The notes under the pieces: model-generated
The model's input: the letters and a program-made list of their open reading frames with translations, nothing else
What the model was told of the DNA's origin: nothing
Databases searched by the model: none
Made by a program: the position numbers and the translations under genes
Virus record (IMG/VR): IMGVR_UViG_3300027759_004177
Coordinates: 1 to 64,000 of that record
Strand: one strand, 5' to 3'
Length of the DNA stretch: 64,000 nucleotides
In this document: piece by piece, positions 1-12,385 of the stretch
Position numbering within the stretch: position 1 is the stretch's first letter
Layout of the letters: every line of letters starts with the position of its first letter

Positions 1-545
1 TTGTTGGCAGCAATGATACCAATATAAGCCACCCCAGATACAGGCTGGTGATGATGACTGCACATACTACGCAATTCACTTCTAACAACCAACATTCCTT
101 CATATCGATCCTCACTATCGTTGGGAAAAGCTGTGGCATCGGGTCTTGGTTCATATCTACCTGCCATGATTTCGTTGAAATACATCTTGGCCAATCTACG
201 TGCTGTGCCATGGCTGTTGGGATCTGTCGCACGATCAATCAACAGGGTGTCTAAAACTCGTTCAAAAGCTTCTGTAGCTTCATCGATTAGTCGTTCTTTG
301 TCGCCTTCGTGCAAGTAATCGCTGATGTTGTCACCGGCCCAGAAACGTTTCTTGTCACGCTTCATGTTGAATCGAATAGCATCGGCTAGATACTTGCCTT
401 CTTCGTAACCTTTATCGCTCATATGCATTACAGCATCTTCGTATCCGGGATGATACGGTGCTTCATTTACGTATTGTGTAGCTTTGATTGCATCAAATAG
501 TAGATCTTTATCTTTATTTTTATCTTTATTTTTATTTTTGGACAT
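1..545 (-). CDS. folE: GTP cyclohydrolase I (5' part; runs off the window edge)
   Basis: Manual translation (absent from ORF track): MSKNKNKDK...DPNSHGTARRLAKMYFNEIMAGRY...SMCSHHHQPVSGVAYIGI; CxHH zinc motif and TxxRxAKMY are FolE hallmarks; GGAG RBS upstream. Confidence 0.93.
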   Translation of the reverse strand, partial: MSKNKNKDKNKDKDLLFDAIKATQYVNEAPYHPGYEDAVMHMSDKGYEEGKYLADAIRFNMKRDKKRFWAGDNISDYLHEGDKERLIDEATEAFERVLDTLLIDRATDPNSHGTARRLAKMYFNEIMAGRYEPRPDATAFPNDSEDRYEGMLVVRSELRSMCSHHHQPVSGVAYIGIIAAN

Positions 546-582
546 GTATTCTCCGAGTTAGTGTCGTGGATGACTTTGTATT

Positions 583-611
583 ATTGTATGATATTTAGAT
601 TGCAAAGTCAA
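583..611 (-). promoter_or_regulatory. sigma70-like promoter with embedded TAAATA, upstream of folE
   Basis: Minus strand TTGACT-17 nt-TACAAT with TAAATA in the spacer. Confidence 0.65.
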
Positions 612-1176
612 TGGTTCTCAAGTCTGAATATTGGATATATTTAGGTTTTTCGTCCACTAATGGTAATTTTTGTGATCCCAGTTCGCATACTTCTAACGTG
701 GGACAATAGTGATATCCTTGTTCAAATACTTTTTGTTCGGTCCAGGGCAATATGGATAAATCTCTACCATCACTACGCATACGACTCAGTGTTTGGTAAT
801 CTTGTTTGTTGTCTAACAAGATAGCACCTGCTCTACCTAACTGTAAGGGTTTGCCGTTACCGAAACTTAAACATTGTTTATGGCCTGCACGGTACATTGC
901 TCGTTCAAGTCTGCGAGCACTATCCCAGATATTGGTATGCCCAAATTGATATTCGCCTTGCCACGCCTGGTCTTTTAATTCGTAATGTATACCCAATTGA
1001 CGAATCATTTGCGGAACACTAAGATAGGTATATGCTGTAAACTCTGTGTAAGTGACTCGGTCTAACCTAAAACACAATTCCATTGCGTGTGTGCAACTGT
1101 CGGTGACAACCACATAAGGGGCACCGGTATACTCTGCCAGTGCGTGTTCAAAGTCAAACAGTCTTTTAAAACTCAT
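595..1176 (-). CDS. DegT/DnrJ/EryC1/StrS-like PLP-dependent aminotransferase (short form)
   Basis: FEHALAEYTGAPYVVVTDSCTHA, DSAR, CLSFGNGKPL (PLP Lys), GRAGAIL. Confidence 0.75.
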   Translation of the reverse strand: MSFKRLFDFEHALAEYTGAPYVVVTDSCTHAMELCFRLDRVTYTEFTAYTYLSVPQMIRQLGIHYELKDQAWQGEYQFGHTNIWDSARRLERAMYRAGHKQCLSFGNGKPLQLGRAGAILLDNKQDYQTLSRMRSDGRDLSILPWTEQKVFEQGYHYCPTLEVCELGSQKLPLVDEKPKYIQYSDLRTIDFAI

Positions 1177-1248
1177 ATATTCAAATTGCCTTTAGTGGAA
1201 CACTATTATAATATAAATACCATATCAAATCAAATTTAATTTAATCAA

Positions 1249-2334
1249 ATGAAACGTGCTGTTATCTGTGTTGCCAATCCTTGGGAATATATACCGCTAT
1301 ACGATAAAAATTATAGCATTATGGTATTGAATCCTGCAGCGCCTGCTGATCGAAATCAATACTTGTTGAACAATTCAGACTGGAGCCTATTGGTCACGGC
1401 CGACAACATACAAGAAAGAGACGGTGCCGATTATCCTGGAGAAAAAGTTTACTGGTATACATCGGGCACCACCGGCGACAGTAAATTTTACAGTTTTACC
1501 GAACAACAAGTCGATTATGTGTGTCGTCAAATAATCAAATCCTACGATCTTACTGCCAATGATCGATATGTTGGTGTAATGAGTCTATGGCATGCACACG
1601 GACAAATGATGTATTGGATGAGCCGCATGACTGGCATGGAAACAACATTTTTGCCCATTGGACGATTACAAGAAGTTTCCAAACACAGTCCCACATTCAT
1701 CACCGGCATTCCAGACATATTAAAAGCCTTGATGAAGCAACAGTTTGATAGTTTACGATTTGTTCGTAGTGCCAGTTCTGCTTTGCCTCCACAACTGTAT
1801 TCTGCCATGAAAGAACGTTTTGCTGTACCTATCGTGGAAAGTTTTGGTATGACAGAATCGTGTAGTCACTGTCTGACTAATCCCTTGGAAGGTGAACAAC
1901 GCATAGGCACAGTGGGTTTACCGGATGGAGTAGAAGCACGTATTGAGCAAAATAAACTACTGATTAGAGGGCCGGCTGTGGCCGATTCGGATTGGCTCGA
2001 CACCGGCGATTTGGCCGAGCAAGATGAAGCAGGGTACTTTCGAATTCTAGGACGTAGTGTGGATCGTATCAATGTGCGTGGTTACAAATTGGATCCCTTG
2101 AGCCTGGAAAACAAACTATATGCGGCCTTTCCTGACCTTAAAGATCTAGCAATATTTGGTACCGACTCTGTAAAATGCATATACAATGGACCGTACGATA
2201 AAACGCAAATCAAGGCAGTATTGGTATCTATGGGACAATCGTGTTATCCAACCATACTTGAAGAAGTTGATTCAGTACCTAAAAATGCCGCGGGCAAGGT
2301 GTCAAGGACCATGCTCAATGACCTATTCGCTTAG
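1249..2334 (+). CDS. ANL-superfamily adenylate-forming enzyme (acyl-CoA synthetase-like, compact)
   Basis: YTSGTTGDSK, FGMTE, TGD, GRxxDxINVRG, PKNAAGKV core motifs. Confidence 0.85.
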   Translation: MKRAVICVANPWEYIPLYDKNYSIMVLNPAAPADRNQYLLNNSDWSLLVTADNIQERDGADYPGEKVYWYTSGTTGDSKFYSFTEQQVDYVCRQIIKSYDLTANDRYVGVMSLWHAHGQMMYWMSRMTGMETTFLPIGRLQEVSKHSPTFITGIPDILKALMKQQFDSLRFVRSASSALPPQLYSAMKERFAVPIVESFGMTESCSHCLTNPLEGEQRIGTVGLPDGVEARIEQNKLLIRGPAVADSDWLDTGDLAEQDEAGYFRILGRSVDRINVRGYKLDPLSLENKLYAAFPDLKDLAIFGTDSVKCIYNGPYDKTQIKAVLVSMGQSCYPTILEEVDSVPKNAAGKVSRTMLNDLFA

Positions 2335-2685
2335 GTGATCTTTTTTAATCTCACGTACTGCACACTCTAGTCGTTCAGCAATAGCGTTTTTAATGGCAAT
2401 ACGTTTGTTGTTGTGATCTCTAATGGCAATGGCACGTCGACCAATTTCTTCTAGCCCTAGTTCTTGTTCACGCCCAGTTTTAAGCAAGGACTCTAGTTCC
2501 CATATCTCGTTGTGTATGCCCACAAGATTCATATATAAATCTTCAATTTTTTCTATGTCGTGTGCTATCGCTTGATTCATGTACCAAGTGAGTTCTTCAG
2601 CATTGGCTCCTCCGGTGCGTTTAAACTTAACGTCGGCGATGGCCAGGCGATCAAATAATTCAATAACAGGAAATGTAGGAGTCAT
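2323..2685 (-). CDS. hypothetical helical protein
   Basis: 120 aa ORF, ATGA-coupled to upstream radical SAM gene. Confidence 0.7.
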   Translation of the reverse strand: MTPTFPVIELFDRLAIADVKFKRTGGANAEELTWYMNQAIAHDIEKIEDLYMNLVGIHNEIWELESLLKTGREQELGLEEIGRRAIAIRDHNNKRIAIKNAIAERLECAVREIKKDHLSE

Positions 2686-3710
2686 AGGTATAAGGTCTCT
2701 ATTTTTTTGGGGTTATCTAAAATGTTTTGTATCTGTATATTGCTTATGTTAGGACGACATGGAGCACAAAACTCCACACGAGTTCGATTGTATATTTCGT
2801 AATGACGAGCATTCAACCAACTATCACGGAAGTCTCCTGAGTCCCAATTGGCCAATTCAAACTGTGGATTACCCTTGCCTTCACAACAGATGTATATTTT
2901 ACCATCGGCACAGAATACAGGAAAGTGGAACATCTGGTGACACTTCTTGTAGTTACGTGGCAGAGTTTTGTTTTGATTGGCCCAGTATGGTAACCTGTAC
3001 AACTGACTGTACTTTTCTAGTCTAGCAATGGTCTCTGGGGTAATTGGGTATGCTTGATTGTCAATGATAACAGGACGGAAGTAAATCATACGACCACCCA
3101 ACTTGGCTACCAAGCGAAACAGATCATTCATTGCTTCTTCGGTGTCGTTCAATGGGTTTATCAATGCTTTAAAGTCAACATTGACCCCGGCTTGGATCAG
3201 GCCACGAGCATTGTCACATACCTTGGTAAACAAACTACGAGCAGTTAGGCTACGACGTATTTCTTCATACAAACTTTCTGTGCCGGCATCAATGTCAATA
3301 CCAATCCAGGCCATCTTGCGTAGTTTATCCACGTGAACAGTATCCAGCAGGGTGTCCAGGTTACTGCCGTTTGTGGTCAAACTGGTCAGGAATCCAAGGT
3401 CCAGGGTATGTTCAATGACCTTCTCGTAACTGACCAATACAGTGGGTTCTCCACCGCCGGGATAGGTAATAGTATGAGTTGTGCCGTAACTGCGGGGAGT
3501 GTGTGCTCGCCATCCTGCTAACTTGTCTAGTAATGCAATGTATTCTGTGTATTTCTTTTGTACAGGCTTTTCTGCACGGAAGTCGGCAGAATTGCAGTAG
3601 TAACAGTCTTGATTACACACATTGGTCAGATCTATGTCTACCTGAGCAGGCAAGATCTTCATGGTGTCTTGATTTCTCATCCAATGGACAAGTTCTGCGT
3701 ATTGATACAT
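2682..3710 (-). CDS. radical SAM protein with C-terminal SPASM/twitch-like Cys region
   Basis: CNQDCYYC, GGGEP, TTNG; C-terminal CHQ..ADGKIYICC..CAPC. Confidence 0.88.
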   Translation of the reverse strand: MYQYAELVHWMRNQDTMKILPAQVDIDLTNVCNQDCYYCNSADFRAEKPVQKKYTEYIALLDKLAGWRAHTPRSYGTTHTITYPGGGEPTVLVSYEKVIEHTLDLGFLTSLTTNGSNLDTLLDTVHVDKLRKMAWIGIDIDAGTESLYEEIRRSLTARSLFTKVCDNARGLIQAGVNVDFKALINPLNDTEEAMNDLFRLVAKLGGRMIYFRPVIIDNQAYPITPETIARLEKYSQLYRLPYWANQNKTLPRNYKKCHQMFHFPVFCADGKIYICCEGKGNPQFELANWDSGDFRDSWLNARHYEIYNRTRVEFCAPCRPNISNIQIQNILDNPKKIETLYL

Positions 3711-3736
3711 TATGGGCCCGGGGAATTAGATCCAAG

Positions 3737-4732
3737 TTACGGATAGGTAAGCGATCGTAGATACCACTTATAAGCTGAGTCTATAATAGTACTTATGTCG
3801 CTGTATTCGGCAGTCCAATTTAACCATTCGTGTGCTCGGTCTACCTGTGCCACCAACTCTGCTGGATCTCCTAGTCTAGGAGCAGATACAACAGTACGGA
3901 AATCGGTGTCGTAGTGTTGTTTGACATAGTTGACAATTTCTTGATTGCTGATACCACCACCTGTGCCAAGATTGATCTGCTGTGCACCAACCCATCCATG
4001 AGCTTCGCCGGCGCGATCAGCGGCCATCACATGTGCCTGTGCTAGATCCCATACGTGTATGTAGTCTCTGACGCAAGTACCATCACGTGTTTTATAATCT
4101 GTGCCGTTTAATCCAAATTCTTCTTTACGCAACATAGATTCTAACACTCGTGCCACAATATGTGTGGCATTGGGCTCTTGGCCAAGGTCGTAGTTGAAAG
4201 GTTCAGCACCAGCCGCATTGAAAAATCTAAAACATACGCTTGGGATAGCATGAGCCAAGTAATAGTCTTTTAATATGCGTTCACAAGTGGCTTTGGTATT
4301 GCCATACGGACTGATTGGATCGACACGATGACCTTCAGGAATAGGCAAACGTTCAGGCTCGCCGTACACACTGGCACTTGAACTAAACAAGATCAACGGA
4401 CGTTTGGGCAAAGTTTTTACCACGTCCAAGAACTTTACAAATTTTACCACATTGTTGTCCCAGTACTCGCCGGGATTTGTCATGCTAGGGCCAACAAGAC
4501 TGGTACCAGCACAATGTACAACAACGTCAGGGTTGGCATGTATTAACACACTCAACGCACCATCGCTGACAAAGTCTCCGATAAAATACCCGTCAATGTC
4601 TCGGAGTGTGTGTTCACGTCGGACTTGATCCACTATAGTAACGTGGTAGCCGTGTTGTTTGAATGCCCGTGCCACGTGACTACCAATGTAGCCACACCCA
4701 CCGGTTACAACAACTCGTTTCGTGCTAGTCAT
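3737..4732 (-). CDS. galE: UDP-glucose 4-epimerase (extended SDR)
   Basis: TGGCGYIGSH, FSSSASVYG, YGNTK, RFFNAAGA, DGTCVRDYIHVWDLA. Confidence 0.9.
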   Translation of the reverse strand: MTSTKRVVVTGGCGYIGSHVARAFKQHGYHVTIVDQVRREHTLRDIDGYFIGDFVSDGALSVLIHANPDVVVHCAGTSLVGPSMTNPGEYWDNNVVKFVKFLDVVKTLPKRPLILFSSSASVYGEPERLPIPEGHRVDPISPYGNTKATCERILKDYYLAHAIPSVCFRFFNAAGAEPFNYDLGQEPNATHIVARVLESMLRKEEFGLNGTDYKTRDGTCVRDYIHVWDLAQAHVMAADRAGEAHGWVGAQQINLGTGGGISNQEIVNYVKQHYDTDFRTVVSAPRLGDPAELVAQVDRAHEWLNWTAEYSDISTIIDSAYKWYLRSLTYP

Positions 4733-4905
4733 TCAGCCCGTCCGGTAGTACAACTATCACTCCAAAGTTCTTGTGCTTGTTGGCGGTATTGATCCAGTTC
4801 ATATTCGTCTAGTTTAACACGATATGCTTCTTCTGTCAAGGCATGCCAGCCACAACATTTACCTGTTGGGCTACGTCCACACCCGCATTTGGCTTGTTCG
4901 GTCAT
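4729..4905 (-). CDS. small CDGSH-like iron-sulfur protein
   Basis: Manual translation MTEQAKCGCGRSPTGKCCGWHALTEEAY... (58 aa); resembles CxCxxSxxxxCDGSH; ATGA overlaps at both ends. Confidence 0.6.
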   Translation of the reverse strand: MTEQAKCGCGRSPTGKCCGWHALTEEAYRVKLDEYELDQYRQQAQELWSDSCTTGRAE

Positions 4906-5105
4906 TCTGGAATCCTAACTTTTAATCCACGCCATTGGTCGATTTGTATCTCGCCCCACCCTTTTTCTTTAGTCCAGTCTGCACGATGCGTCCAGGGCCA
5001 TGCTGTACTCATCACTTCATATTCGCCTTCGTGTACAGGATCTAAATCAAATGGAAACCATTCGGTTTTTAGACTTTCAATGTCATCAGTGGTAAAGGTT
5101 GTCAT
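4902..5105 (-). CDS. hypothetical protein
   Basis: 67 aa ORF, translationally coupled. Confidence 0.65.
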   Translation of the reverse strand: MTTFTTDDIESLKTEWFPFDLDPVHEGEYEVMSTAWPWTHRADWTKEKGWGEIQIDQWRGLKVRIPE

Positions 5106-5245: not shown

Positions 5246-5405
5246 GGATAAGATCTCCTGTTACGGCATTGACCTTCATACCGGATTCGTTAATATAATA
5301 AGGTTGGCACATTTTAGTGCCATCCCATCGTTGTCCGCACCAGCACTCACCTTCTGCATTAATGATGCAATTGCCTGAACCGCAACAGCGTGGATCAGTC
5401 ATCAT
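5229..5405 (-). CDS. small Cys-rich hypothetical protein
   Basis: RCCGSGNCII...CWCGQRWDG..MC. Confidence 0.5.
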   Translation of the reverse strand: MMTDPRCCGSGNCIINAEGECWCGQRWDGTKMCQPYYINESGMKVNAVTGDLIHDQKI

Positions 5406-6072
5406 TACGCCCTCCAAACAACTGCAACAGGCTGATAAAAATATTGATAAAGTTTAGGTATAGGCTAAGTGCTCCTAACACTTCTTCGCGACCAGTATCA
5501 CTATCATGTGACACTATTTGGCGAATATTTTGTGTGTCGTATGCAGTTAGTCCCAAAAACACAACAATAGCAATAGCACTGATGACCATTTGCAACACTG
5601 AGCTGCCAACAAAGATATTGACAATGCTGGCAATCACAATGGCAATCAAGCCCACAAACATGAATGATCCTACACTGGTCAAATCTTTTTTGGTAAAGTA
5701 ACCATAAATGCTCATGGTGCCAAACAGCACAGCGCCACCCATAAAGGCTGTAAAGATACTGCCCATGGAATAGATCACAAAGATTGTGGCAAAGCTCAGG
5801 CCCATAAGAGCACTGAACGCATACAAGAATAATTGTAGTCCAGTCTTGCTAAATCTTTCAGACGCAAATGTCATTGCTAGAATACACACCAACGGAGCAA
5901 AGATTACGATCCATTTTGTTAGTCCTGTAAAAAAGACTCGCACTAGCTCTGGACTGGATCCTACAAAATAGCTCACAAACATACTGATAACCACAGCAAG
6001 ACTCATGTGACCATACACACGACCCATTGCTTCATTAATTCCTGCGGCACTACGGTATACTGCTGTATTCAT
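5395..6072 (-). CDS. Bax inhibitor-1/YccA family membrane protein
   Basis: Seven hydrophobic segments; AYDTQ and GALSLYLNFINIF motifs. Confidence 0.9.
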   Translation of the reverse strand: MNTAVYRSAAGINEAMGRVYGHMSLAVVISMFVSYFVGSSPELVRVFFTGLTKWIVIFAPLVCILAMTFASERFSKTGLQLFLYAFSALMGLSFATIFVIYSMGSIFTAFMGGAVLFGTMSIYGYFTKKDLTSVGSFMFVGLIAIVIASIVNIFVGSSVLQMVISAIAIVVFLGLTAYDTQNIRQIVSHDSDTGREEVLGALSLYLNFINIFISLLQLFGGRNDD

Positions 6073-6087: not shown

Positions 6088-7296
6088 TTAAAATGGCCAT
6101 TTGGCTTTTGTTGCAACGTCCTCGGGCACAGATGCTACAATACGATCCATTGCAATTGCCGGATCCCATTCCCGGCAGAACTTTGCACGATTGGCACGGC
6201 CTTCCTTGGTGTCGGGATCATAATCAATCCAACTAAAGTCTGTGCCATTGCAGTCGGGGCAATGATCGTTGTATTCTTCATCTTCTACACGGTCTTCACT
6301 CTTACCTATCCATCCACACTCTTTGTTATCGCAAATGACATTGGGTGGCTCGGGTGGTTGATTGACCCATGAGCTTGTGTCCCAGTTGTAACCTGACCAT
6401 GACACAACGCCATCCTGTCTAACTGGATTAAATTTTCCGTATTCCCAGTCACCAAACTCCTTGCCATCCCAATACAGGCTACCATAGGTGCTGCCTCCAC
6501 CATAGTTGCAACTATAGTATCCTGGAATTGTGGGTTTTTGTTTCTTGAACTTGAATGTCTCTGAACGTTCCCACTCACTTGGACTGGTTCCGAATTCGGG
6601 ATGACCCCAATCTTTTTCTTCGGGTTCATAGCGTTCCCAGTTGCCTTCATCGTCGGTGATCCGTGCCATGGTAAAGTCTGAACTCTTACCATCGGTGCTG
6701 CCACCAAAGTTATCAATGTCTTCACCGTTATATGTTAGACCAGTAACAATATCTTCGCCATCGAACTCTTCGTAGTGCAGTTCCAGTTTGGTGATATCAA
6801 ACGGTTCAGTAAGTTCGATCTCGCCTTCAAAGAAGGTGCCTTTTTCATTGCTAGTTCCAACAAATACGATCTCGCCCTTCTTGCGGCTTCCAATCCAAAC
6901 TTCGTCGTCGCAACACCACTCTGGGCTGTCTTCGGATGCACCATCACAGTCATCAAATGACTTTTGAAACACAGTTTCGCCCGTTTCATCTTCAATCTGA
7001 ATTGTACCAGCATCGCGACTTACACCATTGGTGTGTCCCATATCATCGCACTCGTACCAGGATCCTGGTGGGAATGGCAACAGGTCTTCGTCTAGATCCA
7101 TGTCTTCACAGGCATCATAGTTCCAGGCGATGTCACTGAGATCAACTTGCTTATTGTTACAATAATCCCAGACTTCCTGGGTGGTTGTGCCCATAACACG
7201 TTCGCCACCGTAGCCCCACATGCTAACCTTATAGGTGCGTGGTGTAAACTTAAGAACAGCTACTAGTTCTTCTGCTGTAATATCTTTGGTTGTCAT
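6088..7296 (-). CDS. acidic hypothetical protein with C-terminal zinc-ribbon-like motif
   Basis: Long Asp/Glu-rich ORF; CDNKEC...CPDC. Confidence 0.7.
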   Translation of the reverse strand: MTTKDITAEELVAVLKFTPRTYKVSMWGYGGERVMGTTTQEVWDYCNNKQVDLSDIAWNYDACEDMDLDEDLLPFPPGSWYECDDMGHTNGVSRDAGTIQIEDETGETVFQKSFDDCDGASEDSPEWCCDDEVWIGSRKKGEIVFVGTSNEKGTFFEGEIELTEPFDITKLELHYEEFDGEDIVTGLTYNGEDIDNFGGSTDGKSSDFTMARITDDEGNWERYEPEEKDWGHPEFGTSPSEWERSETFKFKKQKPTIPGYYSCNYGGGSTYGSLYWDGKEFGDWEYGKFNPVRQDGVVSWSGYNWDTSSWVNQPPEPPNVICDNKECGWIGKSEDRVEDEEYNDHCPDCNGTDFSWIDYDPDTKEGRANRAKFCREWDPAIAMDRIVASVPEDVATKAKWPF

Positions 7297-7297
7297 T

Positions 7298-8476
7298 TTA
7301 GTATTTGCTTTCATGAGTGTGTTTACGATAATCAGTGCTCATACGGCGCCACTGCTCTCCTTTACCTTCTAAAATATCTACAATGCGATCAATACAACCG
7401 TCGGTCCAATCACTAATACGTCCTTGGTTAGGATGGGGATCAGCCAACAAATTGACCAGTTTGGTTTCGGCATCATCTAACGACCAAGGAATGTAAAGTC
7501 GTTCAGGATCGTTAGCAAAAGTTTCAGGGAAACTACGATAAGCAGGATAAAGCACGTTGGCTCCCAGAGTGTCTGCTTCTGAAACGGTGTTTGATACCCA
7601 GTCTTGCAGAGCACAATTAAACAACACACGAGTATCGTTAAGTAGATGATAGTAATCATTTTTTTCCAAATCCTCATATACTGTTAGCCAACCGCGAGCC
7701 TGTAGGTCTCTAGTACGAGCCATGTAGCTGTCATTGTTTGACTTTAGTTTAGCACCACTGAAAATAGCAAACTCCACTGGAAAGTTGTTGTGATTACGAT
7801 GCCATTGTTCAATTAAATCCATAAAGAAGTCTGGTTGCTTTTCCTGATCCCAACGTGCTGCAAATCCCACGCGATATGCACGATCCTGGAATGGTTTTAG
7901 TTCGCCCTCGATGCGACCACGCACTTCCGATTTGCCAAATGCCAAGCCCGAAATGTTATAGATGTTGCCTTCCCAACCGGCCACCTTCATGTGCATGACC
8001 ATTTCTTCATTTGATGCTAGAATAATGTCCGCAAAACTATCCACCATTTTTTCATAAAGCCCCATCCACTTCTGCATACCCCACACATGAACGAAATCAT
8101 CAGGGTCAATACTTTGTGCAAGGCAACGAACGGCAATGCGAGGACGATGAGCAGGATCGATTTGATCCATAATATAAGGTAAGCTCTCGATACCGGGTTG
8201 AAACATGTCTTCAAAATAGATAACATCTTCATTTGTAACTTCTCCCTGTTTCATCTTGCGTACAAGATTCATTAGTTGGCTCATACCAAAGTAAGTACGG
8301 CCATGTGCATCTAGCACTTGTCCTGTGACAATGGCTTGATCATTGCTGAGTGTTTCACCTGTAACAAGTTCGTACGTGATGCCACGACGTTTAAACACAG
8401 ATTCATTCCAGTCTTGTAACTGTAATGTGTATCTTGCTTTGTAGGGCTCTAGGCCCATGTACCATAGTTTACGCAT
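7298..8476 (-). CDS. GT-B fold glycosyltransferase
   Basis: FAARWDQEKQP, DWVSNTVSEA, LYPAYRSFPE resemble the GT4-like C-terminal domain; start MRKLWYMG follows RBS. Confidence 0.7.
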   Translation of the reverse strand: MRKLWYMGLEPYKARYTLQLQDWNESVFKRRGITYELVTGETLSNDQAIVTGQVLDAHGRTYFGMSQLMNLVRKMKQGEVTNEDVIYFEDMFQPGIESLPYIMDQIDPAHRPRIAVRCLAQSIDPDDFVHVWGMQKWMGLYEKMVDSFADIILASNEEMVMHMKVAGWEGNIYNISGLAFGKSEVRGRIEGELKPFQDRAYRVGFAARWDQEKQPDFFMDLIEQWHRNHNNFPVEFAIFSGAKLKSNNDSYMARTRDLQARGWLTVYEDLEKNDYYHLLNDTRVLFNCALQDWVSNTVSEADTLGANVLYPAYRSFPETFANDPERLYIPWSLDDAETKLVNLLADPHPNQGRISDWTDGCIDRIVDILEGKGEQWRRMSTDYRKHTHESKY

Positions 8477-8490
8477 CTTATAAAGCCTCA

Positions 8491-8751
8491 TTAGTCTCTG
8501 GGTTTCCAATTCGTATCACGTGGTTTAAACGTGGTACGATCACGCTTGGGAGTACGCCACTGGTCCCATGGTTCACGCCCACGTACCATTTTCATGTATT
8601 CACCGTAGGGTGTGCGTTCGTTGTAAAGATTTTTCTCATCAAACGGATAACCATAGTCTCGACAAAAACGCTCATAGCGTTCTAGGTCTTCAAAGATAGC
8701 GACCACTTCGGGTTTGAAACGAAGATACTTCTTTAGCCATTCTTGGGCCAT
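8491..8751 (-). CDS. hypothetical protein
   Basis: 86 aa ORF with AGGAG RBS. Confidence 0.7.
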   Translation of the reverse strand: MAQEWLKKYLRFKPEVVAIFEDLERYERFCRDYGYPFDEKNLYNERTPYGEYMKMVRGREPWDQWRTPKRDRTTFKPRDTNWKPRD

Positions 8752-8762
8752 GTTACTACTCC

Positions 8763-9212
8763 TTAAATTACAATTGATTGGGAAGGGCGAGTGAGGTTAT
8801 AATGAATCAAGCAACCGTTCTCGCCATCTTCGGCCACTTGAATTGAAATATTACGATTGGGATATCGATCTGCAATCTGTATGTAAAGATCGTCAGCGAT
8901 CATTTCACACGATTTGAAATCCAGTTCTAAAACGGTATTCTGACCGTTATACAGCGACTCGAGCCATCGTTTGAACTGGATGAACTCGATGTCCCGGTCA
9001 TTGTGGAACACATCGATTGACACCCGGAAATGAAATATATGGCGATGAGGATTAGCAAGGAACGCGACATCATACTCTCCTGCTGTATTTAGCCGGGGAT
9101 CAGTGGCCGCCGCTGGGTAGCAATGGATACCTTCTTTGCGGAAGGTGACCCAGATTCTGCGCCGGGCAGCTGTTTTAACTCTTTCAATTACTGCTCTTTG
9201 TTCTTGATTCAT
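8763..9212 (-). CDS. QueD-like T-fold protein, DpdL-type (candidate 7-carboxy-7-deazaguanine decarboxylase)
   Basis: LANPHRHIF matches the LxxxHRHxF signature I recall for DpdL; IEFIQFK, SCEMIA and EDGENG echo the QueD fold; near DpdA-like gene and folE. Confidence 0.7.
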   Translation of the reverse strand: MNQEQRAVIERVKTAARRRIWVTFRKEGIHCYPAAATDPRLNTAGEYDVAFLANPHRHIFHFRVSIDVFHNDRDIEFIQFKRWLESLYNGQNTVLELDFKSCEMIADDLYIQIADRYPNRNISIQVAEDGENGCLIHYNLTRPSQSIVI

Positions 9213-9213
9213 T

Positions 9214-10314
9214 TTATGCCTTGAGCATGTTAATAAGATTAGGGAAAGTTTTTGTAAAATCTAAATTTCTGCGTTTATCTATTGTGTTTAACGAGTATAC
9301 AACATTGTCTATATTTTTGTCAAATGGTTTGGTAAGAAATTCTGCACAATTATGTAAACTGTTGCCAAATGTTGTGTTTGGATTATATCTATTTAGATCG
9401 CTGATTAAATCACCTAAAATTTTATCACCAAAATTTCTAGCGTCCAAATATTTTGGTTGTGTCAAGTAATGTACTGCTGTGCGATCAATATCTACGCCCA
9501 AATCAATAAGATATTCCCCAGTTTCAACAATGTTGGTAGAGAGCAAGAAATAATTCATTGTTACACCAATTTTCTCCTGGGGCCATTGTTGAATCAATTG
9601 TCGAAGGTTCGTTTCAAACTCCGACCATACTCCTGGATGCCTGATATACTCAAATTGAGCACCTGTGGCTTCAACACTGATTTCCCATTGCACATTGTTA
9701 AACTGTTTTATTTTAGAATAAATTCCAGTTTTTAAATTTGAAAGATTAGTGGTGATGCGTACCAAGCAATCAGGATTGGCCGCATATAATCGATCCAACA
9801 GTTCGCCATTTTCTTTAATCATCAACGGTTCGCCGCCGGCCAAGTATACTTCTTGAAGTCCCGCCAGTTTATCGTGTGTGTAATCTTTCAATTGATCAAA
9901 TGTGGAACAATCGGCATTGACAGTTTGTCCCATTTCAGCCGCCCACAAACTGCTAAAGTATGGACCACAATAAACACAGGCATAGTTACAGACGTTTGAC
10001 CAGCGTAGATCCAGTTGTGTCAGTTTATGCGTACCATCGTAATCAATGTCAACGTCCTTGTGTAATTTGAGCTGGTATGCTCGATTACTAAACTCAGGAT
10101 CTACAGTTTCTCTTTGCTCGCATAGCTGACAGCTTTTGGGCCAGTGACCTGATTTTAAACTGTTTCTTATTTGTTGATTTTGTGTGTTGTCTAATATTAC
10201 AGCAATTGGTGAAGATTTTAAGTTGCCCAGGGTTTCTTGGCTCATGGCACAATTTCTAACAGAACCATCGGGATTAACAGCGACGCCAGTCCACGGAAGC
10301 GGACAAGCGATCAT
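9214..10314 (-). CDS. radical SAM protein with N-terminal twitch/SPASM-like domain
   Basis: CPLPW..PDGSVRNC, CQLC, then CNYACVYC, GGEP, TTN. Confidence 0.85.
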   Translation of the reverse strand: MIACPLPWTGVAVNPDGSVRNCAMSQETLGNLKSSPIAVILDNTQNQQIRNSLKSGHWPKSCQLCEQRETVDPEFSNRAYQLKLHKDVDIDYDGTHKLTQLDLRWSNVCNYACVYCGPYFSSLWAAEMGQTVNADCSTFDQLKDYTHDKLAGLQEVYLAGGEPLMIKENGELLDRLYAANPDCLVRITTNLSNLKTGIYSKIKQFNNVQWEISVEATGAQFEYIRHPGVWSEFETNLRQLIQQWPQEKIGVTMNYFLLSTNIVETGEYLIDLGVDIDRTAVHYLTQPKYLDARNFGDKILGDLISDLNRYNPNTTFGNSLHNCAEFLTKPFDKNIDNVVYSLNTIDKRRNLDFTKTFPNLINMLKA

Positions 10315-10826
10315 TTTATAACTTCGTCTTGTGTGTATTTGGACCAATCCGTAAACTTAGTACGATCCTTTAAGTCATGTAACTGGTGACACCATACTCC
10401 GGGATTGGTTGCTGCAAAGTCTTTGTCATCCAGCTTTATTGTGGCGTTGTATCCCAAAAGTTGCAGATATGGTAGTTTAACACTGATCATTGGGATGAAA
10501 TTGTTGTACTCGATCAAACAGCCCTGGGCTAGACCTTCTGCACTAGACACATCCAAGTCCAAAGTACACAATAGACCTCGTTGTAAACATGAGGTGATCA
10601 TGCCTTCCCATTCACGCCAAGTATCGCCATCGTCGACGTCAGGATTGGGAAAACTTTGGTTGGCACCAAAATAAACATGGTTGCAATTATTGTCCATGAC
10701 CATATTGATAATAACGCCGGCGTCTTGTACACCAACCACAAATAAAGTTTTATGTCCAAATGCCGGGCTATGCTCTACTTCCCGGCCAACAAAGAAATTT
10801 ACTTGTTCGTGTCCTGCTCTGTTCAT
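10311..10826 (-). CDS. hypothetical protein coupled to the DpdA-like gene
   Basis: 171 aa ORF whose ATG overlaps the stop of the TGT-fold gene. Confidence 0.75.
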   Translation of the reverse strand: MNRAGHEQVNFFVGREVEHSPAFGHKTLFVVGVQDAGVIINMVMDNNCNHVYFGANQSFPNPDVDDGDTWREWEGMITSCLQRGLLCTLDLDVSSAEGLAQGCLIEYNNFIPMISVKLPYLQLLGYNATIKLDDKDFAATNPGVWCHQLHDLKDRTKFTDWSKYTQDEVIK

Positions 10827-12385
10827 TCTGCCTCCAGTGCGTCTAGTTTAGTTTGATCAAATTCTTGTTCTGTTGTTTCTTCTACAATTTCTACATCATC
10901 TTCAAAATAAAACAATTTACTAAAATTGGCACTACCGTTAACAGCTTTCTTGCCTTTGAATCCTCTAGTACCAACAATTTCACACCAATACCCGGTATCT
11001 CCTTTATACATATCAATGATCTCCATCGATGTTGCTTTATCTGGGGCAGCAAAGATTGCTTCTACGATGTCTTCAAAATATTCACCACCCGGGCCTGAGC
11101 TACGCATCATGGCAGGATGAGCACCGGCATCAAATCTACGATTGGCTTCTTGTACCGCTGTCAAATGCATCCATACATTATGACCCATTAACAATGCGTA
11201 ACTAAAACTATCCCATGACGTTTTGCCTTCTTTGCCATTCTTGTTTACATCGCCTGGTTTGTAGTAGCAAATGTCTTTCATTTTAAACAAGTTACTAAGT
11301 GGACTGTCTTCCCAACGTGGATACTTGCCATCCGCTACCACTCCGTCACTCCACTTGCGTGTGTCTGTTGCGTACTTTTTGTCATCTGCACTAGGAGCCA
11401 TCCTGTATGACCACTTGCCGTTGTCGGGAAACACATTTTCAAAGTATACCTGTCCGTTGGCAGTTGCCAAGAATGGACTAGCACAATCAAAGCTGATAGT
11501 GAAACTAGGATTTACATATTTTCTAACGTTTCGTTGTATTACAGTTAACAGTACTGCCCACTCTAGTTTGCTTGTGCCCAAGAAGTGCATCCAATCGTGA
11601 ACACCTTCTTGTAACAAGTTATCATGACGTAGAGTAACTAAACGTCTGAGAATCAACTCTACGTCACACATGTTTTGTCCACCCATGGCCCATCCGTTAA
11701 AGTGTGTGTCTGGATGTTGCACAGGATCACAATAGTGTTTCATGGTTTCGTACCAATCGTCGGCCTCAATGTGGTTGGCACCTTGTAATACATTTAAGAT
11801 CTTAACACCACCGTTCTTGATACCTTTACGATTGGTCATAAAGTAATCATTGTTGTATTTGGTAGCATCAACAGCTTCCTGGTGCGTACTGATACCACAT
11901 TTCTTACCTGCTTCTTTATCTAGTGCAACCCAGGTTGGAATATCAAGGGTCATACCGTAGTCAGCAATGCCATCAAGCCAAGCCAAAACCTGTTCTCGTT
12001 TTTTCTGTGCTTTGGGACATCCTGAATTGGCCTTCCAATCGCCTTCCCATAATCCTTTGGCAATCTGGAATCCACCAGAGTCGCCTAAGATCAGTGTGTT
12101 GGGATCACGATTGCGTACCATATCCTCTGACCAGTCCTGTTTGGCAAGGTCGAGGTTTGCGTGGCCACCGGAGTAAAGAGACCACTTGTAAGGAAACAAC
12201 GCTTTTTGATCATTCAACCAGTTGAGTTGTTCCATGTCTGTTATGCCTTGCGGAAAACGTGTAGGATCCACATAAGGTCCGGCAGGATCACGTTGCTTGC
12301 CTATGAACGTGGCATAGAAACCACTGATGGCTGGAAGGAACACAGCATAGTCTGATTGTTTGGCAGTTAAGTTATCTTGGCTCAT
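10823..12385 (-). CDS. TGT-fold transglycosylase, DpdA-like (inserts 7-deazaguanine derivative into DNA)
   Basis: GDSGGFQ, MTLD, VLQG, GWAMGG, HFLG, SFDCAS align with TGT substrate-binding/catalytic motifs; no CxCxxC zinc site. Confidence 0.75.
   Translation of the reverse strand: MSQDNLTAKQSDYAVFLPAISGFYATFIGKQRDPAGPYVDPTRFPQGITDMEQLNWLNDQKALFPYKWSLYSGGHANLDLAKQDWSEDMVRNRDPNTLILGDSGGFQIAKGLWEGDWKANSGCPKAQKKREQVLAWLDGIADYGMTLDIPTWVALDKEAGKKCGISTHQEAVDATKYNNDYFMTNRKGIKNGGVKILNVLQGANHIEADDWYETMKHYCDPVQHPDTHFNGWAMGGQNMCDVELILRRLVTLRHDNLLQEGVHDWMHFLGTSKLEWAVLLTVIQRNVRKYVNPSFTISFDCASPFLATANGQVYFENVFPDNGKWSYRMAPSADDKKYATDTRKWSDGVVADGKYPRWEDSPLSNLFKMKDICYYKPGDVNKNGKEGKTSWDSFSYALLMGHNVWMHLTAVQEANRRFDAGAHPAMMRSSGPGGEYFEDIVEAIFAAPDKATSMEIIDMYKGDTGYWCEIVGTRGFKGKKAVNGSANFSKLFYFEDDVEIVEETTEQEFDQTKLDALEAE

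What the first reader, a model, noticed from the sequence alone, without database searches (positions are those of the whole stretch)
1..12385. Extended 7-deazaguanine DNA-modification locus: DpdA-like + DpdL-like + glycosyltransferase + GalE + tailoring enzymes
Seen: a TGT-fold protein lacking the tRNA-TGT zinc cysteines (10823-12385), a T-fold protein with LxxxHRHxF (8763-9212), folE, and in the same minus-strand run a GT-B glycosyltransferase two genes after the DpdL-like gene, GalE, two radical SAMs and a DegT-like aminotransferase. Established: FolE/QueD/QueE make CDG, DpdA swaps deazaguanines into DNA, and DpdL-type proteins are linked to unsubstituted 7-deazaguanine. Inference: a sugar-nucleotide enzyme and GT inside the locus suggest a further, possibly glycosylated, G hypermodification beyond known dPreQ0/dPreQ1/dG+/dADG/dDG. 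queD/queE are not in this window and may lie beyond folE.
Basis: partly seen in the sequence, partly recalled or inferred. Interest (0 to 1): 0.8.

Follow-up and report, generated by a model that had tools for sequence, protein, structure and literature searches.

The report
Phage deazaguanine DNA-modification locus with glycosyltransferase
A freshwater jumbo phage carries genes that probably swap guanine in its DNA for a 7-deazaguanine base. A dedicated sugar-adding enzyme sits beside these genes in seven separate phage lineages, which predicts, but does not prove, a sugar-decorated G modification not yet described.

Summary
On the minus strand, 10823-12388 encodes a 521-aa protein with no Pfam, NCBIfam or PHROG hit. 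Its AlphaFold model matches only tRNA-guanine transglycosylases in the PDB. Its profile aligns with the DpdA of phages ACP17, BUDD and BUCT-ZZ01 (hhalign 97%). It keeps the DSGG and FDC aspartates and has no zinc cysteines. 8763-9212 is a true DpdL homologue (LANPHRHIF). 7298-8509 is a GT4-type GT-B glycosyltransferase. 3737-4732 passes the GalE cut-off. folE is cut by the window start.

Among 50,697 phage genomes, this glycosyltransferase subfamily occurs in 23 records. Eighteen of them (six lineages, plus this clade) have it within 3.5 kb of DpdL, usually touching it. Seven DpdL lineages lack it, including phiST, the only one with measured dDG.

GalE is conserved only within this clade. The radical SAMs, the AMP ligase and the half-length DegT-like gene are variable accessories.

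Best reading: a DpdA/DpdL 7-deazaguanine DNA system with an optional glycosylation step. The sugar, its acceptor, and whether it ends up in DNA are all unknown. This is a new variant of a known kind, and it can be tested in the cultured phages PA5oct, ACP17 and BUCT-ZZ01.

The parts
10823..12388 (-). DpdA-like TGT-fold transglycosylase (521 aa from the ATG; the ORF extends to 12436 from a TTG)
   Evidence: AF2 pLDDT 87.9. Foldseek top 10 in the PDB are all TGT, ArcTGT or QTRT. BFVD hits include Motura TGT, an uncharacterised nt-1 protein and a phiST protein. hhalign against the ACP17/ZZ01/BUDD DpdA gives 97.2%, E 3.5e-11. D103 (DSGG), D149, H268 and D301 (FDC) are invariant or nearly so. No zinc Cys motif. 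36% identical to PA5oct gp0316.
10311..10826 (-). 171-aa protein of unknown function, a recurrent partner of DpdA
   Evidence: Homologue of ACP17 ASD50402, which lies directly upstream of the ACP17 DpdA (E 1e-16). Present in 39 of 80 relatives. No family or Atlas lead.
9214..10347 (-). Twitch/SPASM-domain radical SAM protein (accessory)
   Evidence: NF033640, 4e-71. Only weak QueE similarity. A homologue is found in only 6 of 80 relatives.
8763..9212 (-). DpdL (QueD-like T-fold; proposed 7-carboxy-7-deazaguanine decarboxylase)
   Evidence: LANPHRHIF at residues 52-60. Homologues in 29 phage records, including ACP17 and phiST DpdL. phrog_17812, 1.8e-34. Aligns with QueD but lacks the catalytic Cys.
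8491..8751 (-). 86-aa protein of unknown function between DpdL and the glycosyltransferase
   Evidence: Present in 73-75 of 80 relatives. No homologue found outside the clade.
7298..8509 (-). GT4-like (GT-B, retaining type) glycosyltransferase; likely ATG at 8476
   Evidence: AF2 pLDDT 80. Foldseek top hits are BshA, glycogen synthase, MshA and PimA, TM 0.6-0.7. Four of five family members hit PF00534. Homologues lie next to DpdL or DpdA in PA5oct, ACP17, BUDD/X1, BUCT-ZZ01, Phosso and BCSR5.
6088..7314 (-). 408-aa acidic protein with a C-terminal Cys cluster, function unknown (accessory)
   Evidence: No family hit. Found in 7 of 80 relatives. Atlas gave no usable lead.
3737..4732 (-). UDP-glucose 4-epimerase GalE
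   Evidence: TIGR01179 at 289.6 bits, above the 262.3 cut-off. GGCGYIG and YGNTK motifs. A homologue is in 57-58 of 80 relatives. Not found next to DpdL outside the clade, apart from a short epimerase-like protein in PA5oct.
2682..3710 (-). Radical SAM protein, 342 aa (accessory cassette)
   Evidence: PF04055, 2.7e-11. Sub-threshold viperin-like match. Found in 4 of 80 relatives, always with the 120-aa gene.
2323..2685 (-). 120-aa protein of unknown function (accessory cassette)
   Evidence: No family hit. Found in 4 of 80 relatives.
1249..2334 (+). AMP-binding (ANL) adenylate-forming ligase, short form (accessory cassette)
   Evidence: PF00501, 2e-30. All acyl-CoA ligase NCBIfam matches are below cut-off. 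Found in 6 of 80 relatives.
595..1176 (-). Half-length DegT/DnrJ/EryC1-like protein (193 aa)
   Evidence: PF01041, 1.2e-10, covering only profile positions 28-86. SFGNGK motif. 165-222 aa in 24 relatives, so it is a conserved short form and not a fresh truncation.
1..544 (-). GTP cyclohydrolase I FolE, C-terminal part missing at the window edge
   Evidence: Read directly. FolE HMM, 6e-63. The full-length 278-aa copy in L006 matches NCBIfam FolE at 6e-39.
13010..13879 (-). Sliding-clamp-like replication protein (context: the module sits inside the replication genes)
   Evidence: 33% identical to the Phosso protein annotated 'DNA polymerase III sliding clamp beta' and 32% to PA5oct gp0314.
14745..17438 (-). 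Family B DNA polymerase (context)
   Evidence: PF00136 and PF03104. 48-51% identical to the PA5oct and Phosso polymerases.

Best explanation
The locus is a phage DNA guanine-modification module built into the replication gene block. The order is PolB, clamp, DpdA-like, DpdL, glycosyltransferase.

FolE raises the flow of GTP into the 7-deazapurine pathway. QueD and QueE are not in the window, so CPH4 and CDG must come from the host or from elsewhere in the 220-360 kb genome (inferred).

DpdL, a QueD paralogue without the catalytic cysteine, converts CDG into the base to be inserted. The literature proposes plain 7-deazaguanine, but this has not been demonstrated.

The 521-aa TGT-fold enzyme is a divergent DpdA. 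It exchanges guanine in double-stranded phage DNA for that base after replication (inferred from fold, catalytic residues and context).

The GT4-type glycosyltransferase travels with DpdL in seven lineages. It adds a sugar from a UDP-hexose, either to the deazapurine before insertion or to the modified base in DNA. In this clade GalE supplies the 4-epimer of the donor (inferred).

The radical SAM, AMP-ligase and DegT-like genes are strain-variable add-ons. They may tailor the sugar further, or they may be unrelated.

The expected result is phage DNA that resists G-dependent restriction.
For: DpdA assignment. The fold is closest to TGT. Among BFVD viral models the hits include a phage-annotated TGT, an nt-1 protein and a phiST protein. 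The profile aligns with the ACP17-type DpdA over the catalytic core. The Asp residues of DSGG and FDC are invariant in 45 homologues. In Vibrio phage 2.275.O the same family sits beside QueF, a YhhQ-like transporter, QueC, an amidotransferase, FolE and QueE. The homologue in PA5oct (36% identity) belongs to a phage whose DNA resists G-containing restriction sites (PMC12191111).

DpdL. It carries the motif and is homologous to the proteins named DpdL in PMC10516641.

Glycosyltransferase. The fold is GT-B/GT4 and the family hits PF00534. R219, E223, K224 and E311 are invariant.

Linkage. Of 23 phage records with this glycosyltransferase subfamily, 18 also hold DpdL. The chance expectation is about 0.01 records. 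The two genes are 0-2.7 kb apart in PA5oct-like phages, ACP17, BUDD/X1, BUCT-ZZ01, Phosso, BCSR5 and this clade, despite different gene orders and different DpdA types. BUCT-ZZ01 has a second glycosyltransferase on the other side of DpdA.

Optional step. On the DpdL tree, lineages with and without the glycosyltransferase are interleaved, as expected for an add-on step.

GalE passes its equivalog cut-off. It is kept in the locus in most of 80 relatives.

ACP17 dpdA plus dpdL alone gave no dDG in E. coli, and the authors suggested that other enzymes may be needed (PMC10516641).
Against: No chemistry was measured.

Plain 7-deazaguanine has no obvious hydroxyl to glycosylate, so either DpdL's product or the acceptor differs from what is assumed.

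The closest structural relatives of the glycosyltransferase (BshA, MshA) act on small molecules, not on DNA.

The window protein itself does not reach any Pfam glycosyltransferase threshold; its best match is 0.041.

GalE is not linked to DpdL outside this clade.

The DpdA-like family also occurs alone, without DpdL, a glycosyltransferase or FolE nearby. In Phosso it lies about 170 kb from DpdL and the glycosyltransferase.

queD and queE are missing from the window.

Window, PA5oct and Phosso share 48-51% identical polymerases, so these three are not fully independent lineages.
Confidence: 0.5

Rival explanations
1. This is a plain 7-deazaguanine (dDG-type) or other non-glycosylated deazaguanine system. 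The glycosyltransferase and GalE serve something else, such as glycosylation of a virion protein or of the host envelope, and are neighbours only because of genome organisation.
For: phiST makes dDG with DpdL and no glycosyltransferase (PMC10516641). GalE and the other sugar-type genes are linked only within this clade. One glycosyltransferase-bearing lineage (PhiXhv/Ep032) has no DpdL within 10 kb of it or in the DpdL search. It sits with GlmS-like and deacetylase genes.
Against: The glycosyltransferase touches DpdL or DpdA in seven lineages whose gene orders and DpdA types differ. The subfamily is almost absent from the other roughly 50,000 phage genomes. It is translationally packed inside the PolB-to-glycosyltransferase array, with no intergenic gap over 15 nt.
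Confidence: 0.2
2. The glycosyltransferase works on a free small molecule made by FolE and the T-fold protein: a deazapurine or pterin intermediate. The pterin case would resemble the pteridine glycosides of cyanobacteria and Chlorobium. The sugar may then be a transient handle or a separate metabolite and never reach DNA.
For: The closest structures are small-molecule GT4 enzymes, BshA and MshA. Pteridine glycosyltransferases are placed by CAZy in a GT-1- and AviGT-4-like family and act downstream of GTP cyclohydrolase I and a PTPS-type T-fold enzyme (PMC5683033, and own knowledge of the pathway). The host of BUCT-ZZ01 is Synechococcus elongatus PCC 7942. A short epimerase/SDR-like protein sits in the PA5oct cluster.
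Against: DpdL lacks the catalytic Cys that QueD and PTPS need. The glycosyltransferase always travels with QueE or DpdA-type deazapurine genes. Most hosts (Pseudomonas, Acidovorax, Xanthomonas, Burkholderia, Sinorhizobium) are not known for pteridine glycosides (own knowledge). I could not compare the protein directly with a pteridine glycosyltransferase.
Confidence: 0.15
3. The modified base enters DNA during replication as a nucleotide. The purine phosphoribosyltransferase next to the cluster would convert the free deazapurine into a nucleotide for the phage PolB. The TGT-fold protein would then have a different or auxiliary role.
For: A xanthine/guanine-PRT-like gene recurs beside the cluster in the near-identical contig L006, in BUCT-ZZ01 and in PA5oct. 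The module lies beside PolB and the clamp.
Against: All phages known to carry deazaguanine DNA encode a DpdA, and the modification is held to be post-replicative (PMC10516641). The PRT could equally salvage the guanine that base exchange releases (inference). It is in only 17 of 80 relatives. No dedicated kinase or reductase was seen.
Confidence: 0.07
4. The TGT-fold protein modifies tRNA (host or phage) rather than DNA.
For: The fold is that of tRNA-guanine transglycosylases.
Against: The zinc subdomain motif of tRNA TGTs is absent. No tRNA genes lie in the 64 kb. The gene sits among replication genes. The PA5oct relative has restriction-resistant DNA.
Confidence: 0.03

Closest known systems
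Cellulophaga phage phiST DpdA3 / DpdL system (2'-deoxy-7-deazaguanine, dDG; Hutinet et al. 2023, PMC10516641)
   Same: It has FolE, a QueD-like DpdL with the LxxxHRHxF motif, and a divergent zinc-less TGT-fold enzyme. It has no QueC. The genes are embedded among replication genes.
   Different: phiST has no glycosyltransferase or GalE near DpdL. Its DpdA3 is 259 aa and only weakly related to the window protein (hhalign 72%). phiST encodes QueD and QueE next to DpdL; the window does not.
Acidovorax phage ACP17 cluster (QueD, FolE, 132-aa, DpdA, 342-aa, DpdL, QueE)
   Same: The 132-aa, 342-aa and DpdL proteins are homologous to the window's 171-aa, glycosyltransferase and DpdL proteins. Its DpdA is the closest characterised-by-name relative of the window's TGT-fold protein.
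   Different: The window's DpdA-like protein is about 100 aa longer and only remotely similar (BLAST E 0.24). Gene order differs. ACP17 has QueD and QueE and no GalE. The ACP17 DNA base is not reported: dpdA plus dpdL gave no dDG in E. coli.
Pseudomonas jumbo phage PA5oct (Wroclawvirus): modified G inferred from restriction resistance (END-nuclease preprint, PMC12191111)
   Same: The same DpdA-like family (36% identity). The order is DpdA-like, glycosyltransferase, DpdL downstream of PolB and a clamp-like protein. The polymerase is related (48%). It has a PRT-like gene.
   Different: PA5oct has a QueE in the cluster. Its DpdL reads PHFHYF instead of PHRHxF. It has only a 172-aa epimerase-family N-terminal fragment rather than a full GalE. 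It has none of the radical SAM / AMP-ligase cassette.
T4 alpha- and beta-glucosyltransferases acting on 5-hydroxymethylcytosine in DNA (own knowledge)
   Same: These are GT-B fold enzymes that use UDP-sugar to decorate a pre-modified base in phage DNA, as an extra layer of anti-restriction.
   Different: They act on a different base with a defined acceptor hydroxyl. No sequence or close structural relation was seen: the top 50 Foldseek hits were GT4/GT5/GT20 enzymes and not T4 glucosyltransferases.
tRNA-queuosine mannosyltransferase QTMAN/GTDC1 (PF12038 plus GT4)
   Same: It is a GT4-type enzyme that glycosylates a 7-deazaguanine derivative within a nucleic acid. It appeared among the language-model look-alikes of the window glycosyltransferase (rank 34, score 0.97).
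   Different: It acts on the cyclopentenediol of queuosine in tRNA. No member of the phage glycosyltransferase family hit PF12038. This is a lead only.
Bacterial and archaeal tRNA-guanine transglycosylases (Pfam PF01702)
   Same: TIM-barrel fold. The DSGG aspartate and a second catalytic-position aspartate are kept.
   Different: No significant PF01702 match. No CxCxxC...H zinc site. TM scores are only 0.38-0.54. About 180 C-terminal residues are specific to this family.

Membership tests
DpdA (DNA 7-deazaguanine transglycosylase, TGT superfamily) | TGT-type TIM-barrel fold | tested here: met
   AF2 model pLDDT 87.9. The ten best PDB matches are all TGT, ArcTGT or QTRT, probability 1.00. BFVD hits include a phage-annotated TGT and nt-1 and phiST proteins.
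DpdA (DNA 7-deazaguanine transglycosylase, TGT superfamily) | Conserved catalytic aspartates (DSGG Asp and the nucleophile-position Asp) | tested here: met
   D103 (DSGG) and D301 (FDC) are invariant in 45 homologues of 27-60% identity. Both motifs align with DSGGLQ and SYDS of the ACP17-type DpdA. Their equivalence to TGT D102 and D280 is inferred from the motifs.
DpdA (DNA 7-deazaguanine transglycosylase, TGT superfamily) | Detectable sequence homology to a protein already assigned as DpdA | tested here: met
   hhalign against the ACP17/BUCT-ZZ01/BUDD DpdA: 97.2%, E 3.5e-11, 187 columns. Against phiST DpdA3: 72%, E 3.3e-5. The subfamily (DpdA1-4) was not resolved.
DpdA (DNA 7-deazaguanine transglycosylase, TGT superfamily) | Match to curated TGT/DpdA models (Pfam PF01702, NCBIfam) | tested here: not met
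   No hit for the window protein. Only 2 of 45 homologues touch PF01702, at E 0.043. The ACP17-type and phiST DpdAs also fail this test.
DpdA (DNA 7-deazaguanine transglycosylase, TGT superfamily) | Encoded with 7-deazaguanine biosynthesis genes | tested here: met
   FolE and DpdL in the window. QueF, QueC, FolE and QueE beside the family member in Vibrio phage 2.275.O. QueE in PA5oct. Some family members stand alone.
DpdA (DNA 7-deazaguanine transglycosylase, TGT superfamily) | Exchanges guanine in DNA (not tRNA) for a 7-deazaguanine base | not testable with these tools
   Needs an enzyme assay or nucleoside mass spectrometry.
DpdL (proposed CDG decarboxylase, QueD-like T-fold) | Signature LxxxHRHxF replacing the QueD motif CxxxHGH | tested here: met
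   LANPHRHIF at residues 52-60. The definition is in PMC10516641.
DpdL (proposed CDG decarboxylase, QueD-like T-fold) | Homology to phiST and ACP17 DpdL | tested here: met
   tblastn 6e-37 (ACP17, 52%) and 4e-9 (phiST, 33%). On the tree it falls inside the DpdL group, apart from QueD.
DpdL (proposed CDG decarboxylase, QueD-like T-fold) | Co-encoded with DpdA and FolE, without QueC | tested here: met
   No QueC or QueF homologue in 64 kb (tblastn). The DpdA-like gene and FolE are present. The QueD and QueE that accompany DpdL in the described phages are missing here.
DpdL (proposed CDG decarboxylase, QueD-like T-fold) | Decarboxylates CDG to 7-deazaguanine | not testable with these tools
   This has never been shown experimentally, even for phiST or ACP17.
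GT4-type retaining GT-B glycosyltransferase | Two-Rossmann-domain GT-B fold | tested here: met
   AF2 pLDDT 80, pTM 0.80. 359 PDB matches at E<=1e-3, led by BshA, glycogen synthase, MshA, GlgM and PimA at TM 0.6-0.7.
GT4-type retaining GT-B glycosyltransferase | Match to Pfam Glycos_transf_1 (PF00534) or related models | tested here: inconclusive
   The window protein matches only PF13524 at E 0.041. Four of its five family members hit PF00534, best 6.8e-12. Homology within the family is E 3e-15 to 6e-10.
GT4-type retaining GT-B glycosyltransferase | Transfers a sugar from an NDP-sugar; identity of donor and acceptor | not testable with these tools
   Invariant R219, E223, K224 and E311 are consistent with a live donor site. 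This is inference only.
UDP-glucose 4-epimerase GalE | Score above the curated equivalog cut-off, plus the GxxGxxG and YxxxK motifs | tested here: met
   TIGR01179 at 289.6 bits, above 262.3. GGCGYIG at residue 11 and YGNTK at residue 143.

The most novel reading that the evidence does not exclude
Phages of at least seven lineages may carry a glycosylated 7-deazaguanine derivative in their DNA. These include the cultured phages PA5oct, ACP17, BUCT-ZZ01, BUDD/X1, Phosso and BCSR5, and an abundant freshwater jumbo-phage clade. The base would be made by DpdL plus a dedicated GT4 glycosyltransferase. In this clade it would be installed by a large DpdA subfamily (913 clusters at 50% identity) that Pfam, NCBIfam and PHROGs do not recognise. 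This would be the first sugar-bearing purine hypermodification of DNA. It could also explain why ACP17 dpdA plus dpdL alone gave no product in E. coli.
Probability: 0.4. Interest if true: 0.8.

Novelty: new variant of a known kind. Interest (0 to 1): 0.62.

Why it matters
Eight 7-deazaguanine DNA modifications are described in the literature read here, and none carries a sugar. A glycosyltransferase tied to DpdL and DpdA points to a further chemical layer on G, comparable to the glucosylation of 5hmC in T-even phages. Such a layer would affect restriction evasion, recognition by type IV, END and glycosylase defences, and sequencing of these genomes.

The analysis also puts a name on a very large family of hypothetical proteins. 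It has more than 7,000 clusters at 90% identity, mostly on jumbo-phage contigs. It is the best candidate for the enzyme behind the unexplained G modification of PA5oct, a jumbo phage studied for use against P. aeruginosa.

The prediction is directly testable in several cultured phages.

Tried and rejected
- Megablast of 8000-13000 against 50,697 phage genomes found no match.
- Pfam, NCBIfam and PHROGs on the TGT-fold protein gave nothing. Sequence and profile searches of PDB sequences gave only noise.
- Pfam on the ACP17-type and phiST DpdAs also gave nothing, so a missing PF01702 hit does not discriminate.
- Atlas searches on the 171-aa and 408-aa proteins gave only chance-level look-alikes.
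- The 86-aa protein is not similar to the 86-aa PA5oct gp0319.
- The N-terminal part of the Bakedbeans DpdL fusion is not similar to phiST DpdA3.
- The BCSR5 446-aa gene next to its glycosyltransferase could not be shown to be a DpdA (hhalign 11%).
- I asked whether DpdL sequences split by presence of the glycosyltransferase. They do not, so I dropped the idea of a glycosyltransferase-specific DpdL subtype.
- I asked whether the 2OG-Fe(II) oxygenase at 17490-18011 could provide an acceptor hydroxyl. It is absent from the other lineages and from 79 of 80 relatives, so I dropped that idea too.
- Promoter-like and terminator-like sites occur at chance frequency. There are no Rfam families and no tRNAs.
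- The supplementary tables of PMC10516641 are not held. I could not see whether PA5oct or 2.275.O were listed there, or which DpdA subfamily ACP17 was given.
I left those two sequences out and ran the job with the remaining rows.
- I could not compare the glycosyltransferase with a pteridine glycosyltransferase, because no sequence was at hand.

Full report
WHAT THE WINDOW IS. The 64 kb have about 42% G+C, no tRNA genes and no Rfam families. Almost all genes are on the minus strand. The genes are those of a large tailed phage: a family B polymerase, tail-fibre-like giants and a Clp-type protease. No cultured phage matches at the DNA level. The proteins have thousands of 75-90% identical relatives in metagenomes, on contigs of up to 370 kb. 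IMG/VR contig IMGVR_UViG_3300032287_003113 (219,879 bp, locus L006) is nearly identical. The polymerase is 48-51% identical to those of the Pseudomonas jumbo phage PA5oct and the 469-kb Sinorhizobium phage Phosso. So this is an uncultured jumbo phage distantly related to those two.

THE OBSERVATION. In minus-strand order the layout is:
- PolB, 14745-17438
- a methyltransferase-domain protein
- a clamp-like protein, 13010-13879
- a 212-aa protein
- the TGT-fold protein, 10823-12388
- a 171-aa protein
- a twitch-domain radical SAM, 9214-10347
- DpdL, 8763-9212
- an 86-aa protein
- the glycosyltransferase, 7298-8509
- a 408-aa protein
- a Bax1-I/YccA-like membrane protein
- a 660-bp gap
- GalE, 3737-4732
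- a second radical SAM, 2682-3710
- a 120-aa protein
- an AMP-binding ligase on the plus strand, 1249-2334
- a 193-aa DegT-like protein, 595-1176
- folE, 1-544, cut by the window edge

From PolB to the 408-aa gene, the reading frames overlap or are at most 15 nt apart.

THE TGT-FOLD PROTEIN. Pfam, NCBIfam, PHROGs and PDB sequence searches all fail. An exhaustive HMMER search finds 913 representative clusters at 50% identity. I aligned 45 members of 27-60% identity. The invariant residues are D103-S104-G106 (DSGG), H268 (HFLG) and D301 (FDC); D149 (LDIPT) is nearly invariant.

The AlphaFold model is confident (pLDDT 87.9, pTM 0.87). Its ten best PDB matches are all bacterial TGT, archaeosine TGT or mouse QTRT (E 2e-7 to 1e-3; TM 0.33-0.54 by target). 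Among predicted viral structures it matches Achromobacter phage Motura 'tRNA guanine transglycosylase', an uncharacterised protein of Vibrio phage nt-1, and the 259-aa protein of phiST.

A profile-profile comparison with the DpdA of ACP17, BUCT-ZZ01 and BUDD gives 97.2% probability (E 3.5e-11). It covers DSGGxQ, the LD/FDEIP strand, QG, HxLG and the (I)S(F/Y)D strand. Against phiST DpdA3 it gives 72%.

There is no CxCxxC or CxxC motif and no conserved cysteine cluster.

Context adds independent support. In Vibrio phage 2.275.O, a member of this family is followed by QueF, a YhhQ-type transporter, QueC, an amidotransferase, FolE and QueE. In PA5oct it lies next to a glycosyltransferase, DpdL and QueE. 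[quoted passage not shown]

Other members of the family stand alone: in a 33-kb phage, and in a 272-kb phage beside PolB and a clamp-like gene. This fits a DpdA that can also draw on host-made bases (inference).

I therefore file the protein as a DpdA-like enzyme of unresolved subfamily. Base exchange in DNA itself is inferred, not shown.

DpdL. The 149-aa protein carries LANPHRHIF, exactly the LxxxHRHxF signature that Hutinet et al. use to separate DpdL from QueD (PMC10516641). It is 52% identical to ACP17 DpdL and 33% to phiST DpdL. On a tree it groups with DpdL, away from QueD. Its proposed activity, CDG decarboxylation, has never been demonstrated.

THE GLYCOSYLTRANSFERASE AND THE CO-OCCURRENCE TEST. 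The 403-aa protein has no significant Pfam hit of its own. It is homologous to the unnamed proteins that lie between DpdA and DpdL in ACP17 (E 3e-15) and PA5oct (E 6e-10). Four of five family members hit Glycos_transf_1 (best 6.8e-12). The model (pLDDT 80) is a GT-B fold. It is closest to the retaining GT4/GT5 enzymes BshA, glycogen synthase, MshA, GlgM and PimA (TM 0.6-0.7).

In the collection of 50,697 phage genomes, DpdL occurs in 29 records, which I group into 13 lineages of cultured phages. The glycosyltransferase subfamily, searched with the ACP17 member, occurs in 23 records. Eighteen records carry both, where chance would give about 0.01.

HMM scans of the DpdL neighbourhoods show the following arrangements:
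- The glycosyltransferase abuts DpdL in PA5oct-like phages, ACP17, BUCT-ZZ01 and Phosso.
- One gene (DpdA) separates them in BUDD/X1.
- One small gene separates them in this window.
- They are 2.7 kb apart in BCSR5.

The gene orders differ. The DpdA types differ: ACP17-type in ACP17, BUDD and ZZ01, and PA5oct-type here. In Phosso the DpdA-like gene is about 170 kb away while the glycosyltransferase stays with DpdL.

BUCT-ZZ01 has a second glycosyltransferase on the other side of DpdA. The window's glycosyltransferase is 63% identical to the BUCT-ZZ01 one, although that phage is a T4-like cyanophage.

Seven DpdL lineages have no such glycosyltransferase within 12 kb or in the genome-wide tblastn: phiST-like phages, RHph_I1_18, Bakedbeans, Ahp1, D479, MA9V-3 and Roos. 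phiST is the only phage with measured dDG.

One lineage has the glycosyltransferase but no DpdL within 10 kb of it or in the DpdL search. These are the PhiXhv/Ep032 phages (25% identity, partial coverage), where it sits with GlmS-like and deacetylase genes.

On the DpdL tree, lineages with and without the glycosyltransferase are interleaved. The glycosyltransferase therefore behaves as an optional add-on to DpdL systems.

GalE AND THE 'TAILORING' GENES. GalE passes the curated equivalog threshold and has its motifs. Across 80 IMG/VR relatives (74-100% glycosyltransferase identity), the constant order is PolB, clamp, DpdA-like, (171-aa), DpdL, 86-aa, glycosyltransferase, GalE, folE, with other genes interspersed.

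The remaining genes are variable:

| Gene | Loci out of 80 |
|---|---|
| twitch radical SAM | 6 |
| radical SAM 342 plus 120-aa | 4 |
| AMP ligase | 6 |
| 408-aa protein | 7 |
| Bax1-I-like | 15 |
| DegT-like | 24 |

These relatives are one clade, so the conservation of GalE there may simply be inheritance. Outside the clade, no GalE lies near DpdL. PA5oct has only a 172-aa epimerase-family N-terminal fragment.

The DegT-like protein is half-length in all 24 relatives (165-222 aa). It keeps an SFxxxK motif, so it is a conserved short form of unknown competence.

Linking the radical SAM, ligase and DegT-like genes to the DNA base is speculation. One chemically sensible idea is that an adenylate-forming ligase activates the CDG carboxylate for coupling to an amino sugar. 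This is inference only.

WHAT IS MISSING. No queD, queE, queC or queF is found in the 64 kb by tblastn or HMM. L006 reaches 2.7 kb beyond the window start. It shows the full folE, then a 141-aa EndoIII-like protein, two small membrane proteins and a 181-aa xanthine/guanine phosphoribosyltransferase-like protein. It shows no queD or queE. The PRT recurs in the clusters of BUCT-ZZ01 and PA5oct. It might salvage the guanine released by base exchange (inference). Less likely, it makes a deazapurine nucleotide.

MECHANISM.
- Shown here: folds, motifs, homologies and gene linkage.
- Taken from the literature: FolE, QueD and QueE make CDG; DpdA enzymes swap deazaguanines into DNA after replication; DpdL is the proposed route to 7-deazaguanine (PMC10516641).
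- Inferred: this DpdA-like enzyme inserts the DpdL product into phage DNA, and the glycosyltransferase adds a UDP-hexose-derived sugar to that base or its precursor, with GalE providing the epimer.

The weak point is the acceptor. Plain 7-deazaguanine has no hydroxyl. Either DpdL's product differs from what is assumed when the glycosyltransferase is present, or the sugar goes onto a carboxyl or amino group or onto a precursor. The ACP17 result (dpdA plus dpdL, no dDG in E. coli) is compatible with a missing partner such as the glycosyltransferase or the 171-aa homologue.

RIVALS.
(a) Ordinary dDG-type modification with an unrelated glycosyltransferase: 0.2.
(b) The glycosyltransferase acts on a free deazapurine or pterin, as in pteridine glycoside synthesis (PMC5683033), and the sugar does not reach DNA: 0.15.
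(c) Nucleotide-level incorporation through the PRT: 0.07.
(d) tRNA modification: 0.03.

COMPARISON AND NOVELTY. The system works like the phiST/ACP17 DpdA-DpdL systems and belongs to that kind. Three things are new relative to the papers I could read.
1. A very large, unannotated DpdA-like subfamily is recognised.
2. A GT4 glycosyltransferase is tightly linked to DpdL in seven lineages.
3. It follows that these phages, PA5oct included, may carry a sugar-bearing deazaguanine.

None of the held papers mentions a glycosyltransferase in this role. I rate this a new variant of a known kind, with interest 0.62. The chemistry is unproven, but the prediction is specific and can be tested in cultured phages.

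Noticed in passing
L006:20173-20718 (2.7 kb beyond the window start); also L004:5093-5554 and L001:15946-16380: A xanthine/guanine phosphoribosyltransferase-like gene recurs beside the deazaguanine cluster in this clade (17 of 80 loci), in BUCT-ZZ01 and in PA5oct. It could salvage guanine released by base exchange, or it could make a deazapurine nucleotide.
   Followed up: partly
L006:19341-19766: A 141-aa endonuclease III-like (HhH) protein lies directly after folE. It is present in only 3 of 80 relatives.
   Followed up: no
L004:7010-8353 (Synechococcus phage BUCT-ZZ01): A second glycosyltransferase (PF13692, 3.4e-5) flanks DpdA on the side opposite the DpdL-linked glycosyltransferase. This hints at more than one sugar transfer in that phage.
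   Followed up: partly
L100:8905-18290 (Vibrio phage 2.275.O): A 596-aa member of the same TGT-fold family heads a full preQ-type cluster: QueF, a YhhQ-like transporter, QueC, an amidotransferase, FolE and QueE. The record annotates it as a hypothetical protein.
   Followed up: partly
L088:11254-12405 (Vibrio phage Bakedbeans) and L092:11491-12372 (Chryseobacterium phage MA9V-3): DpdL is the C-terminal domain of longer ORFs (383 and 293 aa). The N-terminal part of the Bakedbeans protein is not similar to phiST DpdA3.
   Followed up: partly
window 5395-6072 (-): A Bax1-I / YccA-like (FtsH modulator family) membrane protein sits between the glycosyltransferase block and GalE. It is in 15 of 80 relatives, at varying positions. 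It is probably a host-interaction gene unrelated to DNA modification.
   Followed up: no
window 12372-13010 (-) and 13795-14745 (-): A 212-aa protein with a weak sulfotransferase-like PHROG match (E 8e-4) and a 316-aa SAM-methyltransferase-domain protein lie between PolB and the DpdA-like gene. Each is in about 22 of 80 relatives.
   Followed up: no
window 17490-18011, 20158-21408, 22497-22934 (-): Upstream of PolB lie a small 2OG-Fe(II) oxygenase, a 416-aa protein with a cytidine/dCMP deaminase domain, and a ferritin-like protein. The oxygenase is not linked to the cluster in other phages.
   Followed up: partly
window 30229-32523 (-) and 57143-58720 (-): There is a 764-aa ATP-dependent protease-like AAA+ protein (phrog_4871, E 9e-241) and a 525-aa tryptophan-halogenase-like flavoenzyme (phrog_2928, E 2e-91). 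Both are unusual auxiliary genes for a phage.
   Followed up: no
L095 and L096 (ENA contigs of about 33 kb): A 443-aa member of the DpdA-like family sits in a small phage with capsid, portal and integrase genes. It has no deazaguanine synthesis genes within 10 kb, which suggests dependence on host-made bases.
   Followed up: partly
window 7298-8509 versus L004:10001-11167: The glycosyltransferase is 63% identical between this PA5oct-like jumbo phage and a T4-like cyanophage. Their DpdLs are only 40% identical and their DpdAs are of different types. This suggests horizontal exchange of the glycosyltransferase among freshwater phages.
   Followed up: no
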